Shown here: in pieces, positions 23,595 to 30,670 of the stretch
Position numbering within the stretch: position 1 is the stretch's first letter
Layout: each line of letters opens with the position of its first letter
DNA from: Dimorphilus gyrociliatus
Taxonomy: Eukaryota; Animalia; Annelida
Assembly: GCA_904063045.1 (NCBI GenBank)
Contig: CAJFCJ010000003.1
Location: forward strand, 2,029,106 to 2,093,105
Reading direction: 5' to 3'
Length of the DNA stretch: 64,000 nucleotides
Made by a program: the position numbers and the translations under genes
Notes under the pieces: generated by a model
Told to the model about the DNA's origin: nothing
Databases searched by the model: none
Seen by the model: the letters and a program-made list of their open reading frames with translations, nothing else

Positions 23595-24470
23595 TTTGCT
23601 CTGGTTGTTTAACCTAAATTAGCAAACATTAAAAAAATTATAAGCAAACTATTTACCTTCAAATTATTTTATTCTTGACGAAAGATATCAACTAGCGAAT
23701 TGAAGTTGCAGGCCAAGGTCGCAGTGCACTTGACCTTGAGAATACCCTCTCGTCCTACAATTTGTTTAATACGTGAGTATATTAATTTTTATCATTAAAA
23801 CTTTCGTTTGATATTTTTTAAAAATTAAAATACGATCTAAAATAGCTGAATTACGCAAAACCAGTTTTGTTTTTGGGGCCATCTGGTGAGTAATTTAAGA
23901 AAATATATTCAAATTTCTTCTTTGAAGTATTAACTTATTTCATTTCAATCTTAAAGAATCTTTAAAAAAATAATATACAATATCAAAATTACTTATCACT
24001 ACTTGAATTTATCCTTTCAAGTATACCACCGCCAGATGGCACACTTTGATATACTAAGTTGTTTCTATATGTATTTAAAAGTAACTAATAGGGCCTAGGA
24101 ATTGAATTACTTTCTATATTATTGTAAAAATTTTTAAATAATAAATATTATTGATTTTTATTTTAGCTTTTACATTTTGAGGGAATTGTATGGCGACATA
24201 TATACATTAATTGAAAGTATTTGTCAAGAAATGAGCCGTTTAATAATCTATATATATTTATGGAAAAACAATAAAGAAAACAGATTTTGACTTAGACTTC
24301 TAACAACAACACGACTTGTTTATTAAAACAGGCGCCTATAGTTTGTTTAACCAATCACGATAATTTTTACATACCTCAACCAATCAACAAAAGCTACACC
24401 GACATCGAATGACATATTTACTCACACCAATTTTGACGTCCGATTTAGTTACACGAAAAAATCAAAAATC

Positions 24471-25101
24471 ATGGCAGAGAACTTATTGACTTTTTCTAAT
24501 CCCGTCTTTGCTCAATTTGCATATTATTCTGCAATTAGCATCGGGAAGATGTTTGCTATAGTACCTATGATAGTTTACAGACGTTTTTCCACCGGGGTAA
24601 TATACAGAATAACTAGGTATCTCTAACATGGTCTTATATTTTGACCTCTTCAGACTTTTGCAAATAAAGAAGACGTTCTCTCCCGAGACAAAAAAGGAAA
24701 CCCAACTGCTAAAGTTGGAATCAACGAATCAGTAGAAAGAGGCCGAAGGTTACTTTTCTTTAGATATAATTTATGTTGCAATTATTTATAAGAACTATGC
24801 ATTCAGAAATCACTTGAATGATATGGAGAACATTTTCCCATTTGTTCTTATTGGATTCTTCTATGTTCTAACAAAGCCTGACTTGAATGTTGCAACCTGG
24901 CATTTTAGAGTGTTTGCTTTCTCGAGAATCGTCCACATGCTTGCTTATCAAGTAAGTAGCTATAAATTGATTGTTTTGCTTGTGTAATTCATTTTACTTT
25001 TATAGATTCCAATTAAACAACCAACAAGAGCGTTGTCATTTGGTGTTGGGATGGGAACCATGCTGTCTATGCTCTATCAAGTTCTTACATATTCAGCCTA
25101 A
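24471..25101 (+). CDS. MGST1: Microsomal glutathione S-transferase 1 (MAPEG)
   Basis: Four exons, not in the ORF track: MAENLLTFSNPVF..|TFANKED..VERGR|RNHLNDMENIFPF..HFRVFAFSRIVHMLAYQ|IPIKQPTRAL.. Confidence 0.92.
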
Positions 25102-25700
25102 GCGTTTCGTGGAATCGTCTAAAATATAGTGATATGCTATCATAATAGACCTATAACTAAATGTTTCCGTAACAAGCTGTACAATATTGTCATTTGTGAT
25201 TAACCGTGTGAGCAATGTGCTTAGCTCAACATCAGTTTTAAGAATATAGTAGATTTATTCAATGCTCGATAGTTGATATTAAAATTTAAAAGCACAATAG
25301 TTCCATAAACATTTAATTAACCTGAACAATTAAACTTAAAAAAAAAGAGATAAAAATGACTAGAAAAAAATATACTGATAAGATTGGGAAAGAAATCTTC
25401 ACTTAAACTATAGATCAAATGAAAAAAAATACTACTAAACCATGTATCTATGTGGCACCAAAAATACACATTTTACCCAATGTTTCCAATCAAATTGTTA
25501 ACTTGAATTTGTCTCTCAGATATATAATATACATGCTTGTAGCTTGAAATATCAGAAGTTTCGTACATTTCTTCATGTGTGAGAAGAAAAGTAGTCATAA
25601 ATTATGTTTCTTTATCCAAATCATCTCATGTGGCCATGTTTCCTGTTAATAGTAATGTAATAGCTATAAGGAATGCTGGAATAAGTGTTTTGAATTAATT

Positions 25701-27426
25701 TTACTTGAATCCTCTGTAGTGAAATCTCAGATGTGTAATTGCTAGATTTCCTTGCGTGAAAACAACTTTCCCACTAAGAAATGATAGATAGGGTTGCTTC
25801 AATATCTTATTGGGATAACACTGCTTGGATGATCCACCAAGACCGCCGAAAGGTCCAATTTTTCTTTTAGGTGTTTCGAATTGTAAAGAGTCGATCAGCC
25901 AACCATCTCTCGCCTTCACTCCAATAATGTCTTCACCCTCATCTAAATCGAAAGAATGGCTATTGAAAAAAAAATGTTTATAATTTATCGACAGTTTTTC
26001 GAAGAGCTACAACTCGAAAACTAACCTTTCTCCTTGCCTACCTCCGTGTAATTTACTTACACTTGAACCGTAATTGACAAGCAGACCTGATTATTGAGTT
26101 TAAAACGAGCACAATAACTATTGTGAAAATTTTCGTTATATATTTATACCTCCGACAACTGGACGGTTATCCCATAACCGAATATAAATAGTCAAACCAG
26201 TTATTCTTTGCTATAAAAGTATATATTTATTGCATTCAATTGAAATCGAATTTGACTATTTACCTTATCTGTTCGATCTTCATCATCAAAACAGTCAACT
26301 TCGTGTGATATGAAATTTCTTCCAGCTAAAGGCTCGTGAGTAAAGGTTCCAATTTCTTCAATAAATTTAAAAATATTATATGGAAATGAAAAATGAAAGA
26401 AATAATAACTACGAACCAAAACCTCTAGGAACAAAATTAACGTATGTCTTGTTAAAACATTCCAATAGTAGGGGTTTCGCTTCTGGATCATATTTTTTTA
26501 ATAGAGCCTCCTTATCACTTTGAGAGAGAAGATTGAATTTGACACGATCAAAAAGTTTTCGATAGTATTCCTTTGTTTTTTCAATGCTTAATTTTTCACT
26601 TATTTTTTTCTTGTTTATATATTTCTCGATAGTCTTGAAATAAATTGTAGAAAGTAGATAATAAAAACTTTTTTCTTATATAAAAACAAATGAAAATGCT
26701 TACTCGAATAACAAAAATTTCTGATAATCCTTCTTCAGGTACAAATAAAGTTACTTCAAGCAGACTAGCAAACTAAAAATACATTTTTAATATAAGTCTA
26801 TTCTAAAGAACAATTTTATAAATACAAACCATAGCAAATGGTAATGAATAAATAGTCTTCTTTTTTGTTAAGGTTACAAATTTTTCGATTATGAATACCT
26901 TACAATCATTTTTAGTGTTATCTGATAAATTGTATAAGTCGACAACTGCCAATATTTCTATTTCATTGGAAAGTTTTGGTAATATTATTAGCAATTAGAG
27001 TGAATTGTTAGTAAAATACAAACCAAGACAATTATCAATGGTCAAATTCTCTATCAGAAATGTACTGCATTTCTTCTTTACCAATGCAATGTCTAAATAA
27101 TCTGCTGTCTTTAACATATTTAAATAATTATCTCCATTAATCCTTAATGCAGAAGAACCGCAGGAATAACCTAAAATATCTATAATGCAATTTGCACAAA
27201 CATTCTCTGATGACATTCTGCCAACATTATTTCTTCCATCTTTAAACTGTGATTGAAATATAGTTCTAAAATACCCACTGATACCGTATAATACGGTTTT
27301 ATGGCAGTTTATTGATCTTGTAGTTTCTCCAGGATAGCAAACTATTATTACATAATCCGTCAATAATTCATTCCTCCATAAATCGTTGAGTCCTTTAATA
27401 ATTTGCGATTGGAGAGCTTCAGCCAT
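25701..27426 (-). CDS. BTB-BACK protein with C-terminal jacalin-like lectin domain
   Basis: BTB (LTDYVIIV..HKTVL..SGYFRTIF..ADYL), BACK-like exons (DNCL|EILAVVDLYNL..C..FI; LFDRVKFNLL..VPRGF), then in-frame exons ..LHGGRQGE|SHSFDLDEGEDIIGV..GWLIDSLQFET..GPFGGLGG. All introns GT-AG and phase-consistent. Confidence 0.8.
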
Positions 27427-27717
27427 AATAACAGCACTCTTCAAAATTTGGTAGCTACAAAATAATTTGCTTTGTCTCGGGTGCCGTAATTTTTATCAGC
27501 TTGAAAACCTAAATGATGCAGAATATACAAGCACAGAATGCATAAGAGAATCGAGTGTCGCAATTTACATACAAAACAATCTCTTTCGAGATAGATTCCA
27601 ATTAAGTGCAGAGTCCAGTTTTATATATACTGTATATAAAGCCGAATATGAAAACTCCAGCTGCTAACGTAAACCAAAGGAAGAAGAAATAGCTTCATGT
27701 TACAATAGCCGTTCATT

Positions 27718-30670
27718 TTAAGCTATTGTGCACAAGAATACTTCAAGTATAAGTATCCCAAATAATATGTAAATGGGTAAAACGTAATACTCTTTTATAT
27801 TAACTTTATAAATACCAAATAATGGAACAAACGACTTATTCGTAATTTGCTTTGAATCTTTCAAATTATATATACTTTTATTATCAATTACTTCACCCTC
27901 AAGATTTAAATTTAAGCTCCTTTTATTCTTAGCAGTATGTTCCGTTTTAAAATCTTGAAAAAATTCTTCAGAGTTGAAATATTCGTCATTTATATATTTC
28001 GTATATTTTCCCAGATCAATTGGCTCATTACTTTTTCTATGCCATTTTGGAAATACCTCGGAATCATTAACACGAATTTTACAATGGAACTTGCTGTCCG
28101 AACCTTCGATAGCATAAAGTTTATTTTCGCATTTCTTGCATTTCCTAGAACCATACTCATCCGAGTACGAACCCGGTTGACATTTTCTACAAAACTTTTC
28201 ATGTAAATCTGTAGGACTTCGATAATATCCTGGCTTACACGGTATGCAAATTAAAACAAAAGGATCGAACTCGCTTCCTGCTCCGCAATAGAAATCATCT
28301 GAACTATCTCTATTTGAATGCTCTTGAAAGACGTTTTGTGTCAAAGAATATTTTATTTTCTTTTTAAAAGTATTAAGAGGAATTTTAAAATATTCTACTA
28401 CTAAGCAGTAAAGTTTCGAAAACCAACTCTTTCCCCCATCACCAGTTTCTTCAATAAATTCTTCGAATTTCCTAAACTCTTTCTTTGTATAGTAATTTGC
28501 TTTTAAATATTCAGTGTAGATGTTTTGAAAATTAGGATCTATTTGTACTGATGAGTAATTTTTTGTACATTTTTCTCTAGCTTTCATACTTTCTAAAGGA
28601 TAGATAGTAAAAGAAAGTACCAAACTGCCCGATGGAATTTGTTTCCATTTCTGACTTTTTTTTTTCATCCACTTCATTTCGGGTTTTTGTATTGAGAAAA
28701 TATCAGCAATTTCAAAAGCTTTTAGATTGTTTCCAGAACTATCTGTCCAATTTAACTCACGTTCAGTTGATTTTTTAACTATTTCAGCAATTATTCTCTT
28801 ATCAATTACACATTGTAAGTTTACATATACACCTTTTGCCAAACAGTTACCTATACATATTTTACTTAAGATGTCAGCTTTAATTATTTCAATCTTTTTT
28901 GATAAAAATGATTTATTGAAATATTTACAGCTTGAATATAATTTGTAGCCGGGAATTGGTTCCAAAATCGTTACTAATTCTTTCCTTATAGGTATTTCAA
29001 AGACAGTTAATAAATGACTAAAAGTTAGATTGATCATATTTGAATAAATGATACAATTATACAGCTGACTATCTGCCAAAGAAGCATCAAATATACTCAA
29101 TTCTTTTCCATTGTTAGTAACTTGTATTCTACTTGTAGGAATTACTCTTGCTCCACTTTCTGTTTGCCATTCGTAGCCAATGTTGGAAGGAAGTCTAGTC
29201 AACGAGAAAGCACAGATTGAAATACATAAAATGTGTTGTTTTTACGTTAAATAACAAACTGTGGGTATTGATAAGATTTATTGGCGCAGCTTAATTTAAT
29301 TCGACTGCCAACATACGCAAAGCTATGTGGAATTTTTCTACTAGCTCTTAGAATGGAATTAGAGCATGCTATAAGTTTATTAACACTACCCCAAACCGCA
29401 ATATTAGATTTTGTAACATTTCTACAATTAATACAGTTGAGTGCACCCTCTCTCGAGTTGTAAGTATATGGGGGGCATGTAAAACATTTATTGGAGGTTT
29501 TTGTAGGAATGAAGTGATAGCTTCCTCTAGGACACAGTATGCACTTATCATTTGTCATATAACTTCCGGGAATACAAATAGATTTATATATATTACGACT
29601 TTTTCGTAGGAAAATAGCTTTTAAATCTAATTCTGGCCATTTTTCAAAGTCTTTTAAGGATGATATTATGTAATGTCGACCTTTTTCCAATTCGTCAGAA
29701 ATGCGAACTATTTATTTAAAATTAATTTCATATTTTTAATTAAAGCTCAATAGTTAATAAGAATCAAATGGATTGATAGTACCTGTAATATTATAGACAT
29801 TTCCACCGCTCCTAAATTTAGAATTCATCAAATATATCTTTCTTTGTAAAGCAGTTGAAAAGATCATTTTTCTAATTTTCTCTTCTCCAATTGAGTAACA
29901 ACGAATTTTATACTTCAATTTATTCAGGAAAATGTTTGAAATAATCTTTTGATGTTCTATTTCATTATATAGTTGTAACATATATTTAGCGAATAAATTC
30001 CTTCCAGGTAGCTCTTTGCAAGATAAATGTGATAAATATTCATGGCTTGTCTCCACAGTAGATACAGTCATTGTTAAATTTGGTTTACTAACTACATGTT
30101 TTGAATAATGAGTATGCACATGTAAATCGTTTAATTCTTTTTCAAAAACTGTTAAAATAATACAGTGAAAGGATGTTAGGTTTGTCCAGAATGGTTCAAA
30201 GTAAAGTATTGCCGAGTCGTCAATCATTTGGAAGAGGAATTGATTTCCCGAGAACATTTCATCTATAGGAATTTAGAATAGGTAAATAGTATCTTGATTA
30301 AAATAGTTAATTAAAAAATTAATTAATTACCTTCATCTGAATAGCGAAAAGTTATATTTCCCTTTAAATAACCATAAACAAAAGGTATATTATCACTTTT
30401 ATTACACATAGTAGAATTTTGACAATGAATAATTAGATATTGACCAATATAATTAATTTCAGGATTTTGTCCAAATGACAATTTATTAAGACACGGTACA
30501 CTTACCCTCTGGTAAGATGACGATTGCAACTTTACTAATCCATGATATGTAACATCTCTCGTCACATTACTATTTGCCGGAATGAAAAGGGTGTGTATAT
30601 CATTTATATCTAGGCCCCAAATAAAATGGGATACACAACAGGATAGAAAATAATATGTTCGTATGAGCAT
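27718..30670 (-). CDS. Membrane protein with two Ig + Cys-rich (GCC2/GCC3, ephrin-receptor-like) modules, ZPBP/Sp38-like
   Basis: Signal-peptide-like start; Ig motif LSIFDASLADSQLYNC; Cys repeats CIPGSY..CILCPRGSY..CPPYTYNSREGALNCINC and CIPCKPGYY..CQPGSYSDEYG..CKKC; C-terminal hydrophobic segment. ZPBP similarity is from memory; the last exon is uncertain. Confidence 0.65.

What the first reader, a model, noticed from the sequence alone, without database searches (positions are those of the whole stretch)
25701..27426. BTB-BACK-jacalin fusion: a possible glycan-recognising Cullin-3 adaptor
Seen in sequence: the ORF track suggests a truncated BTB ORF and an unrelated lectin fragment, but short GT-AG introns join them in frame. 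After the BACK-like region and the PR motif that normally precedes Kelch repeats (VPRGF), a 61-nt phase-1 intron (26356-26416) leads into a jacalin-like domain (HSFDLDEGEDIIGV, WLIDSLQFET, GPFGGLGG). There is no signal peptide. Established: BTB-BACK proteins are CRL3 substrate adaptors, and F-box lectins (Fbs1/FBXO2) target exposed glycans for SCF ligases. Inference: a CRL3 counterpart that ubiquitinates cytosol-exposed glycans (damaged organelles, ERAD substrates, microbes). I do not know this architecture from animals.
Basis: partly seen in the sequence, partly recalled or inferred. Interest (0 to 1): 0.75.

Follow-up and report, generated by a model that had tools for sequence, protein, structure and literature searches.

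The report
BTB-BACK protein with lectin-fold tail
This is one real spliced gene of the small marine worm Dimorphilus gyrociliatus that joins a Cullin-3 ligase adaptor front to a jacalin-type lectin-fold end; relatives with this layout occur in cnidarians and, by one database cluster, probably molluscs, and none has been studied, so the idea that it marks sugar-bearing targets for ubiquitin is plausible but untested.

Summary
On the minus strand, eight exons (27426..25701) joined by seven GT-AG introns of 53-70 nt give an open 429-residue frame. The 61-nt phase-1 intron is at 26356-26416, as reported. The model equals residues 361-789 of the public prediction DgyrCDS2363.

Exon 1 is a BTB domain with the Cullin-3 contact motif (F61-K62-D63). 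The middle folds like a KLHL/KBTBD BACK domain. The end is a jacalin-like beta-prism, closest to ZG16 in fold and to griffithsin in sequence.

The layout is not unique. At least 16 database clusters have BTB+BACK+Jacalin. The named ones are all cnidarian, one cluster is mostly molluscan, and one relative is a single uninterrupted ORF. I found no paper on it.

The canonical jacalin sugar site is degenerate. The pair equivalent to griffithsin site II (GWLID plus GPFGGLGG) is almost invariant in the family.

Best reading: a cytosolic CRL3 substrate adaptor with a lectin-fold receptor. The gene and architecture are near certain, the adaptor role is likely, and a glycan ligand is possible but unshown.

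The public model also fuses the upstream gene, which is probably an artefact.

The parts
27024..27426 (-). Exon 1: ATG at 27426 and the BTB/POZ domain (residues 1-134, plus the first base of codon 135)
   Evidence: Pfam BTB E 2.9e-12, residues 13-127. PDB sequence matches to A55, KBTBD2, BCL6 and KLHL11 BTB domains. In the relative L001 the ATG is conserved and preceded in frame by two stop codons.
27238..27246 (-). Codons F61-K62-D63: the phi-X-D/E Cullin-3 contact motif of the BTB alpha3-beta4 loop
   Evidence: The HMMER alignment to vaccinia A55 (6i2m_A) puts F61-K62-D63 on A55 F54-I55-D56. That triplet is the motif defined in bioRxiv 10.1101/461806 and, for KLHL3 (M83-S84-E85), in PMC3616122.
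26830..26957 (-). Exon 2: start of the BACK-like helical region (3-box region)
   Evidence: Family profile positions 147-184, directly after exon 1. It aligns to the BACK start of the relatives.
26704..26772 (-). Exon 3: BACK-like region, 23 codons
   Evidence: Open in phase 0 with a GT-AG frame. 74% amino-acid identity to L001 in the same frame. Too short to be placed by the profile on its own.
26417..26633 (-). Exon 4: rest of the BACK-like region, ending in VPRGF (R270 is a family-invariant Arg)
   Evidence: Profile positions 221-259. The Arg of the PR motif is invariant in alignment A4. On the contiguous public protein, BACK aligns over residues 133-239 but scores 15.9 bits, below the 20.9 cut-off.
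26356..26416 (-).
   Evidence: GT...AG. Both sites are conserved in L001. The same junction ('PRGFEIGTF') is in the public protein P0169.
26264..26355 (-). Exon 5: first strands of the jacalin-like domain. The N-terminal 'GG loop' is degenerate here (PLAGRNF)
   Evidence: Profile positions 303-324; alignment A4.
26150..26210 (-). Exon 6: family signature (W)IRxWDxRPV (here YIRLWDNRPVVG)
   Evidence: Profile E 5.5e-8, positions 331-349. R and W are invariant in A4.
26026..26086 (-). Exon 7: strand plus the second GG-type loop (HGGRQGE)
   Evidence: Profile positions 352-368. The HG is invariant in A4.
25701..25959 (-). Exon 8: last 85 codons of the jacalin-like domain and the TAA stop (25703-25701)
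   Evidence: Pfam Jacalin E 9.8e-5; griffithsin E 3.4e-5; family profile E 1.5e-30.
25890..25904 (-). Codons G363-W-L-I-D367: GXXXD motif, equivalent to griffithsin G66-D70
   Evidence: Alignment to griffithsin. G and D are nearly invariant or invariant in the family. Asp70 is a mannose ligand of griffithsin site II (PMC6723950).
25833..25856 (-). Codons G379-P-F-G-G-L-G-G386: GG loop, equivalent to griffithsin G83-G90
   Evidence: Same alignments. G379, G382, G383, G385 and G386 are invariant or nearly so. Gly90 is a ligand of griffithsin site II.
25621..25704 (-). Optional 3' intron (25704-25643, 62 nt) and mini-exon (25642-25621) used by the public model. They replace the TAA stop by KHGHMR-stop
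   Evidence: Mapping of P0169 onto the window. L001 has a consensus GTAAGT donor at the same position. There is no RNA evidence either way.
27439..27891 (-). 453-nt 'intron' by which the public model DgyrCDS2363 fuses the upstream cysteine-rich ORF to this gene; probably an annotation artefact
   Evidence: Mapping. It is about seven times longer than this gene's other introns. It skips the continuation of the upstream ORF. No relative has such an N-terminal extension. L001 has in-frame stops just before its ATG.

Best explanation
The locus is one protein-coding gene of the annelid Dimorphilus gyrociliatus. It has eight exons and encodes 429 residues (435 if a 3' mini-intron is used). The protein has no signal peptide and three parts. 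The first is a BTB domain carrying the phi-X-D/E Cullin-3 contact motif. The second is a helical BACK-type region like those of KLHL/KBTBD adaptors. The third, in the place where those proteins carry a Kelch propeller, is a jacalin-like beta-prism I domain. The gene is a divergent member of a conserved but unstudied invertebrate family found in cnidarians, probably molluscs, and this annelid. The most likely mechanism is that the BTB-BACK half dimerises and docks on Cullin-3, while the beta-prism acts as the substrate receptor, so whatever it binds is ubiquitinated. The ligand site is most likely the surface formed by the near-invariant GW(L/M)ID and GPxGGxGG loops, which correspond to mannose-binding site II of griffithsin. 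Shown here: the gene structure, the domain homology, the predicted folds and the motif conservation. Inferred: Cullin-3 binding, ligase function and the nature of the ligand (sugar or not).
For: Gene model: open frame with 14 canonical splice sites. All sites are conserved in the syntenic orthologue L001, where exons are better conserved than introns. Non-synonymous divergence is 0.18 against saturated synonymous divergence of 0.74, so dN/dS is about 0.07. The model is identical to residues 361-789 of the public protein DgyrCDS2363.
Architecture is not an artefact of splicing: relative P0006 encodes BTB+BACK+Jacalin in a single 1335-nt ORF on a 5.8-Mb contig. In total 16 representative clusters carry all three Pfam domains. 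Named members come from Actinia, Actinostola, Xenia, Sanderia and Rhopilema. One Atlas cluster with the three domains is mostly molluscan.
Domains in the window's own protein: BTB 2.9e-11 and Jacalin 3.4e-8 at 34.4 bits against a cut-off of 22. The AlphaFold2 model has pLDDT 91.6. Its front half matches Cul3-bound KBTBD2, KLHL22, KLHL11 and A55, and its end matches ZG16 with TM 0.81 and rmsd 2.9 A. The family profile hits griffithsin at 2e-13, banana lectin at 8e-9, ZG16 at 5e-8 and jacalin at 6e-5.
Cul3 motif: F61-K62-D63 aligns to A55 F54-I55-D56.
Ligand site: the GXXXD and GG-loop residues are invariant or nearly so across about 80 family sequences. They align to griffithsin Asp70 and Gly90.
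Against: No binding or ligase data exist for any family member. BACK is below Pfam's cut-off in this protein (15.9 against 20.9 bits) and rests on the model and on colinearity with relatives. The canonical primary jacalin site is degenerate: the N-terminal GG loop reads AGRN, and the C-terminal GXXXD reads Q-G-N-L-A-I, in the whole family as well. In the conserved site, the residues that stack on or bond the sugar in griffithsin (Asp67, Tyr68) are Trp and Leu here. The loops could therefore be conserved for fold stability or for a non-sugar ligand. The orthologue in the relative carries two frame-breaking indels, and the one in exon 7 is seen in two runs, so the gene may be dispensable in that lineage. 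The public annotation joins the gene to the upstream ORF, which would change the N-terminus if real.
Confidence: 0.6

Rival explanations
1. It is a CRL3 adaptor, but the beta-prism binds a protein or peptide degron and not a glycan. On this reading the lectin fold has been re-used as a generic receptor, as Kelch and MATH domains are.
For: The primary sugar site of jacalin-related lectins is lost in the whole family. In the retained site the griffithsin Asp67 and Tyr68 positions are Trp and Leu/Met. The protein is cytosolic, where few glycans occur. The domain scores only modestly against Pfam Jacalin, at 23-47 bits.
Against: The two motifs that are most conserved in the family are exactly the sugar-contacting Asp and Gly-loop of a known mannose site. 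Nucleocytoplasmic jacalin-related lectins and F-box-jacalin chimeras exist in plants (PMC6389600).
Confidence: 0.28
2. It is not a ligase subunit. The BTB-BACK half only oligomerises a cytosolic lectin to make it multivalent, for cross-linking or sequestering glycoconjugates.
For: BTB domains are dimerisation modules in many non-ligase proteins: BCL6 and ZBTB BTB domains are among the sequence matches. Lectins commonly gain avidity by oligomerisation. In some family members the phi-X-D/E position is not canonical, for example in the P0006 group and P0027.
Against: The best structural matches are Cul3-bound BTB-BACK adaptors and not transcription-factor BTBs. The BACK/3-box region, which mainly serves Cul3 binding, is retained in all members. 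The phi-X-D/E motif is present here and, by my reading of the alignment, in at least half of the relatives.
Confidence: 0.08
3. The true gene is the longer public model DgyrCDS2363 (795 residues), in which a cysteine-rich, ephrin-receptor-like N-terminal part is spliced onto the BTB-BACK-jacalin part.
For: The public annotation has this join. Donor GAA|GTAATT and acceptor AG|AGT are canonical and phase-compatible.
Against: The joining intron is 453 nt, against 53-70 nt for the gene's other seven introns. It cuts out the rest of an upstream ORF, which runs on through a hydrophobic stretch to its own stop at 27718. None of about 20 full-length relatives has such an extension, and each starts shortly before its BTB. 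In the relative L001 two in-frame stops lie directly before the conserved ATG, and the 5' flank is only 44% identical. An extracellular-type Cys-rich module without a signal peptide, fused to a cytosolic adaptor, is topologically odd; only a weak Pfam hit supports that module.
Confidence: 0.12
4. Gene-model artefact: a truncated BTB gene and an unrelated lectin fragment that merely lie next to each other.
For: The mechanical ORF list shows only separate pieces. There is no RNA evidence from this animal.
Against: All the evidence under the best explanation applies, in particular an intronless relative with the same three domains, conserved splice sites and purifying selection on every exon, and colinear exon-to-profile mapping.
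Confidence: 0.02

Closest known systems
BTB-BACK-Kelch Cullin-3 substrate adaptors (KLHL and KBTBD families; for example KBTBD2, KLHL22, KLHL11, KLHL3, and vaccinia A55)
   Same: An N-terminal BTB with the phi-X-D/E motif is followed by a helical BACK region and then a C-terminal beta-rich receptor domain. These are the best structural matches of the front half, at Foldseek E 1e-14 to 3e-9. The conserved Pro-Arg after BACK is kept.
   Different: There is no Kelch propeller; a roughly 160-residue jacalin-like beta-prism I takes its place. BACK is shorter and below Pfam's cut-off in this member. Cul3 binding is untested.
Jacalin-related lectins (griffithsin, banana lectin, ZG16/ZG16p, jacalin, PPL3)
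   Same: Homologous by sequence profile, at E 2e-13 to 6e-5, and by fold, with ZG16 at TM 0.81. The GXXXD plus GG-loop pair of griffithsin site II is conserved.
   Different: Intracellular, and fused to a ligase-adaptor module. The primary site (N-terminal GG loop plus C-terminal GXXXD) is degenerate. Sugar binding is untested. ZG16, jacalin and PPL3 are secreted single-domain proteins.
Sugar-recognising F-box proteins (Fbs1/FBXO2, FBXO6, FBXO27) and plant F-box-Nictaba / F-box-jacalin chimeras (PMC6389600)
   Same: The logic is the same: a cullin-RING adaptor module fused to a lectin-type receptor in the cytosol. Plants even combine an F-box with a jacalin-related domain.
   Different: A different cullin system (CUL1/SKP1 via an F-box against CUL3 via BTB). 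Fbs proteins use an unrelated FBA sugar-binding fold. There is no homology in the adaptor half. This is an analogy, not membership.
Other animal jacalin chimeras (natterin-like / Dln1 aerolysin-jacalin; the MACPF-jacalin hit P0097)
   Same: A jacalin-like domain used as the targeting module of a larger protein.
   Different: Those are pore-forming effectors. Here the partner is a BTB-BACK module.

Membership tests
BTB-BACK Cullin-3 adaptors (KLHL/KBTBD type) | BTB/POZ domain | tested here: met
   Pfam PF00651 E 2.9e-12 on exon 1 and 2.9e-11 on the contiguous protein.
BTB-BACK Cullin-3 adaptors (KLHL/KBTBD type) | BACK domain / 3-box after the BTB | tested here: inconclusive
   Pfam PF07707 aligns over residues 133-239 (profile positions 1-96 of 103) but scores 15.9 bits against a 20.9 cut-off. 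The AlphaFold2 model matches KLHL11 and A55 BTB-BACK structures with TM 0.61-0.74. Relatives pass Pfam clearly.
BTB-BACK Cullin-3 adaptors (KLHL/KBTBD type) | phi-X-D/E motif in the alpha3-beta4 loop | tested here: met
   F61-K62-D63 aligns to A55 F54-I55-D56. The motif is defined.
BTB-BACK Cullin-3 adaptors (KLHL/KBTBD type) | C-terminal Kelch beta-propeller | tested here: not met
   No Kelch hit. The C-terminal domain is a beta-prism I. The protein is therefore not a KLHL/KBTBD member in the strict sense.
BTB-BACK Cullin-3 adaptors (KLHL/KBTBD type) | Physical binding to CUL3 and substrate ubiquitination | not testable with these tools
   Needs pull-down or ITC with the CUL3 N-terminal domain.
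Jacalin-related lectins (Pfam PF01419, beta-prism I) | Sequence membership above Pfam's gathering score | tested here: met
   34.4 bits against a cut-off of 22 on the contiguous protein; 23.2 bits on exon 8 alone. The family profile matches griffithsin at E 2e-13.
Jacalin-related lectins (Pfam PF01419, beta-prism I) | Beta-prism I fold | tested here: met
   A model of the window's own protein (pLDDT 91.6) matches ZG16 7o4p at E 6.4e-9, TM 0.81 and rmsd 2.9 A, and ZG16p 3apa at TM 0.81. Relative P0006 gives the same result.
Jacalin-related lectins (Pfam PF01419, beta-prism I) | Primary sugar site: N-terminal GG loop plus C-terminal GXXXD | tested here: not met
   The N-terminal loop reads PLAGRNF. 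The C-terminal motif reads Q-G-N-L-A-I with no Asp, and the family consensus is QGxLxIT. The Pfam match stops at profile position 107 of 136. Which motifs form the primary site is from my own knowledge of Heltuba, banana lectin and ZG16p.
Jacalin-related lectins (Pfam PF01419, beta-prism I) | A secondary site like griffithsin site II (Asp70 with Gly90) | tested here: met
   G363-W-L-I-D367 and G379-P-F-G-G-L-G-G386 align to griffithsin G66-D70 and G83-G90. They are invariant or nearly so in the family. Residue roles are from PMC6723950. The Asp67 and Tyr68 positions are not conserved.
Jacalin-related lectins (Pfam PF01419, beta-prism I) | Measured carbohydrate binding | not testable with these tools
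   Needs a glycan array or ITC on the recombinant domain.
Sugar-recognising F-box proteins (Fbs/FBXO2 family) | F-box domain and FBA sugar-binding domain | tested here: not met
   Neither F-box nor FBA appears in the Pfam scans of the exons or of the contiguous protein. This is a functional analogy only.

The most novel reading that the evidence does not exclude
An ancient invertebrate family of Cullin-3 adaptors (in cnidarians, probably molluscs, and annelids) reads cytosol-exposed mannose- or glucose-type glycans through a griffithsin-like site and ubiquitinates the glycan-bearing target, such as ruptured endomembranes, retro-translocated glycoproteins, or invading microbes or symbionts. This would be a CRL3 counterpart of the Fbs/FBXO2-FBXO27 system that arose independently.
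Probability: 0.3. Interest if true: 0.8.

Novelty: new variant of a known kind. Interest (0 to 1): 0.5.

Why it matters
Cytosolic recognition of sugars by ubiquitin ligases is so far known for SCF ligases (Fbs1/FBXO2, FBXO6, FBXO27, plant F-box lectins). There it serves glycoprotein quality control, clearance of damaged lysosomes and antibacterial defence.

A Cullin-3 adaptor family with a lectin-fold receptor would point to a second, independent solution. It is conserved from cnidarians to lophotrochozoans, it is under purifying selection, and its sugar-site residues are the most conserved positions. It occurs in animals where host-microbe and host-symbiont interactions (corals, anemones) are central questions.

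The family is small, soluble and well modelled, so the hypothesis can be tested directly with recombinant protein.

For genome annotation, the locus also shows that the public model DgyrCDS2363 probably merges two genes.

Tried and rejected

2. Exact look-ups of the 429- and 435-residue products in transcript and genome assemblies found nothing. The word search with the window's own protein found no relative of 0.55-1.75 times its length. The only close relative seen is the genomic locus L001/L002.

3. My first guesses for the organism (rotifer, then cnidarian) were wrong. Earlier notes of this scan and then the NCBI record showed Dimorphilus gyrociliatus.

4. Literature searches for BTB+jacalin, jacalin+cullin, and jacalin+BTB with invertebrate terms returned plant papers and one false match, 'BTBP' in a rotifer lectin paper. 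No description of this architecture turned up.

5. No paralogue of any exon lies in the window.

6. Alternative splice choices that would rescue the two frameshifts of the L001 orthologue were considered by hand and rejected: their phases do not fit, or they delete the conserved HGG loop.

7. Handling of the spliced model. The spliced model was sent to no search or fold tool as typed letters. Exons were searched one by one by reference. A script concatenated the exons to check the frame and printed the translation, and another compared it with the public protein. The contiguous protein was then used only through the public id, as P0169:361-795, as P0169:361-789 and as the domain piece P0169:626-793.
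Full report
**What is in the sequence**

The region lies on the minus strand of an AT-rich window (about 29-32% G+C here). The mechanical ORF list shows only pieces: a 149-residue ORF with a BTB-like sequence at 26995-27444 and a 72-residue ORF at 25701-25919.

Reading the minus strand, I placed eight exons: 27426-27024, 26957-26830, 26772-26704, 26633-26417, 26355-26264, 26210-26150, 26086-26026 and 25959-25701. All seven introns start with GT and end with AG. They are 66, 57, 70, 61, 53, 63 and 66 nt long. The joined frame is open for 429 codons from the ATG at 27426 to the TAA at 25703-25701.

**Is the splice model real?**

Four independent lines support the model.

- *Orthologous locus.* L001 is a 3.3-kb Logan contig (L002 is an identical piece from a second run). 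It aligns from start codon to stop codon at 66% identity and shares the downstream MAPEG neighbour. All 14 splice dinucleotides are kept at homologous positions. Exons are 64-79% identical and introns 45-60%.
- *Selection.* Over 389 codons compared exon by exon, non-synonymous divergence is 0.18 while synonymous sites are saturated at 0.74, so dN/dS is about 0.07. This holds for the BTB, the middle and the lectin exons alike.
- *Colinearity.* A profile built from full-length relatives places the exons, searched one at a time, in strictly colinear and abutting order: positions 21-144, 147-184, 221-259, 303-324, 331-349, 352-368 and 373-455. Only the 23-residue exon 3 is too short to place.
- *Public annotation.* The genome's public annotation, DgyrCDS2363 of Dimorphilus gyrociliatus (GCA_904063045.1, contig CAJFCJ010000003.1), contains exactly these 429 residues as its positions 361-789.

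**Domains**

Searched exon by exon, exon 1 is a BTB domain (Pfam E 2.9e-12). Exon 8 reaches Pfam's Jacalin threshold (23.2 bits against 22, E 9.8e-5). Against solved structures, exon 8 matches griffithsin (E 3.4e-5), banana lectin and ZG16. Exon 1 matches A55, KBTBD2, BCL6 and KLHL11.

Once the public protein was in hand, I used its residues 361-795 by reference. This gave BTB 2.9e-11, Jacalin 3.4e-8 (34.4 bits), and BACK aligned over nearly its whole profile but below the cut-off (15.9 against 20.9 bits).

An AlphaFold2 model of this protein, built with an 81-row family alignment, has mean pLDDT 91.6 and pTM 0.76. Foldseek matches its front half to Cul3-bound BTB-BACK adaptors: KBTBD2 at E 1e-14, KLHL22, KLHL11 at TM 0.61 and A55 at TM 0.74. 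Its end matches ZG16 (7o4p: E 6.4e-9, TM 0.81, rmsd 2.9 A; 3apa: TM 0.81).

The N-terminus is the first BTB helix, with no hydrophobic leader (judged by eye).

**The architecture is not unique**

A full HMMER scan of 1.84 billion representative proteins with exon 8 gave 145 hits. I tested 18 long proteins in which the match lies at the C-terminal end. Sixteen carry BTB, BACK and Jacalin by Pfam. With my own family profiles the count of BTB+jacalin representatives is 18. A further 52 short hits look like exon fragments of the same family.

The members that carry a name are all cnidarian:
- Actinia tenebrosa XP_031567854.1, labelled 'actin-binding protein IPP-like'
- Actinostola KAK3754501.1
- Xenia XP_046853135.1
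- Sanderia malayensis
- Rhopilema esculentum

One 90%-identity cluster has 312 members. The ESM Atlas has a 67-member cluster with BTB 100%, BACK 88% and Jacalin 87%, most commonly from Mollusca.

The relative P0006 (444 residues) is encoded by a single uninterrupted 1335-nt ORF in a 5.8-Mb contig, with two paralogues on the same contig. The fusion therefore does not depend on any splice prediction.

The window's protein is a divergent member, only 23-29% identical to the full-length relatives. A word search with it found nothing closer. I found no paper that describes the architecture. The nearest published concept is the sugar-recognising F-box proteins, including plant F-box-jacalin chimeras (PMC6389600).

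**How it probably works**

*The ligase side.* The HMMER alignment to vaccinia A55 puts F61-K62-D63 on A55 F54-I55-D56. This is the phi-X-D/E motif, whose hydrophobic residue inserts into a pocket of Cul3 (bioRxiv 10.1101/461806; KLHL3 M83-S84-E85 in PMC3616122). By my reading of the alignment, at least half of the relatives have a canonical version: F-I-D, F-K-D, W-E-E, W-K-E or M-K-E. With the BACK-type helices retained, Cul3 docking is the most economical reading, but it is inferred.

*The receptor side.* In about 80 family sequences the invariant or nearly invariant positions are concentrated in two loops (window protein numbering):
- G363-W-L-I-D367, family consensus GW(M/L)ID
- G379-P-F-G-G-L-G-G386, family consensus GPxGGxGG

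The two loops align to griffithsin G66-D70 and G83-G90. In griffithsin, Asp67, Tyr68, Asp70 and Gly90 form mannose-binding site II (PMC6723950). The Asp70 and Gly90 equivalents are kept. The Asp67 and Tyr68 positions are Trp and Leu/Met.

By contrast, the motifs that form the primary site in typical jacalin-related lectins are degenerate here and in the family. The N-terminal GG loop reads PLAGRNF, and the C-terminal GXXXD reads Q-G-N-L-A-I. The assignment of those motifs to the primary site is from my own knowledge.

So a ligand site at the griffithsin-II position is well supported. That the ligand is a sugar is plausible but not shown.

**Points that complicate the picture**

- *5' fusion in the public model.* The public model is longer. 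At the 5' end it splices the upstream cysteine-rich ORF (donor after 27892) onto an acceptor 12 nt before the ATG (27438), through a 453-nt intron. I think this is a merge artefact, for five reasons:
  - The intron is about seven times longer than the gene's other introns.
  - It removes the continuation of the upstream ORF, which runs through a hydrophobic stretch to its own stop.
  - No relative has such an extension.
  - In L001 two in-frame stops lie directly before the conserved ATG.
  - The 5' flank is poorly conserved.
- *3' end in the public model.* The public model uses a 62-nt intron (25704-25643) whose donor overlaps the TAA stop, giving six more residues (KHGHMR). L001 has a consensus GTAAGT donor at the same place, so this may be real. 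It does not touch the domains.
- *Frameshifts in the orthologue.* The L001 orthologue has two frame-breaking indels: -1 near the end of exon 1 and +1 in exon 7. The exon 7 indel is identical in a second run. Either that copy has recently become a pseudogene or both contigs share an error. The long-term signal is purifying selection.

**Verdict**

The gene and its BTB / BACK-like / jacalin-like architecture are real (about 0.95). A Cullin-3 adaptor role is likely (about 0.7). A glycan ligand is possible (about 0.35-0.4).

The layout is not new to animals: it is a conserved, unnamed family present in public databases and in this genome's own annotation. Relative to what has been described and studied, it is a new variant of a known kind, a CRL3 adaptor with a lectin-fold receptor that is analogous to lectin-type F-box proteins.

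The spliced model was sent to no search or fold tool as typed letters. Exons were searched by reference, and the contiguous protein was used only through the public id P0169. A script concatenated the exons for the frame check and printed the translation, and another compared it with P0169. The scan's earlier notes gave me the organism's name, which I confirmed from the NCBI record.

Noticed in passing
window 27439-29037 (minus strand) with 25621-27438: The public gene model DgyrCDS2363 (795 aa) fuses a cysteine-rich, weakly ephrin-receptor-like upstream ORF to the BTB-BACK-jacalin gene through a 453-nt intron. It starts at an internal Met of the upstream ORF. This is probably two genes merged by the annotation.
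   Followed up: partly
window 27718-29202 (minus strand): A 494-codon ORF directly upstream. Its start looks Ig-like (LSIFDASLADSQLYNCII). It has a cysteine-rich stretch with weak Pfam hits to Ephrin_rec_like, NCD3G and TNFR_c6, and a hydrophobic, transmembrane-like stretch just before its stop. It probably has further exons upstream and has no clear family.
   Followed up: partly
window 25621-25704 (minus strand): A possible 62-nt intron whose GT donor overlaps the TAA stop codon, so splicing would swap the stop for six extra residues (KHGHMR). The relative L001 has a perfect GTAAGT donor at the same spot and the same final AGA-TGA.
   Followed up: partly
L001:60-1764 and L002:1-930: The syntenic orthologue in a related, unnamed organism (Logan runs SRR23372231 and SRR23372232) has two frame-breaking indels: -1 near the end of exon 1 and +1 in exon 7. 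The exon 7 indel is identical in both runs. All splice sites are kept and identity is about 68% at the amino-acid level, so this may be a recent pseudogene.
   Followed up: partly
window about 24470-25130 (plus strand): The convergent downstream neighbour is a MAPEG / microsomal glutathione S-transferase-like gene (public call PF01124). Its last exon (25004-25101) is 73% identical to L001:2525-2622, which shows conserved synteny with the BTB-jacalin gene.
   Followed up: partly
L003:3001-4335: The relative P0006 is an intronless BTB-BACK-Jacalin gene. Two paralogues of 71-74% identity lie on the same 5.8-Mb contig of an unnamed ENA assembly (ERZ25073285), which indicates a local expansion of the family in that organism.
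   Followed up: no
protein P0097 (hit): A 682-residue protein combines an SNTX-type MACPF/CDC-like pore-forming domain with a C-terminal jacalin-like domain. This is another animal-type chimera that uses the same lectin fold as its targeting part.
   Followed up: no
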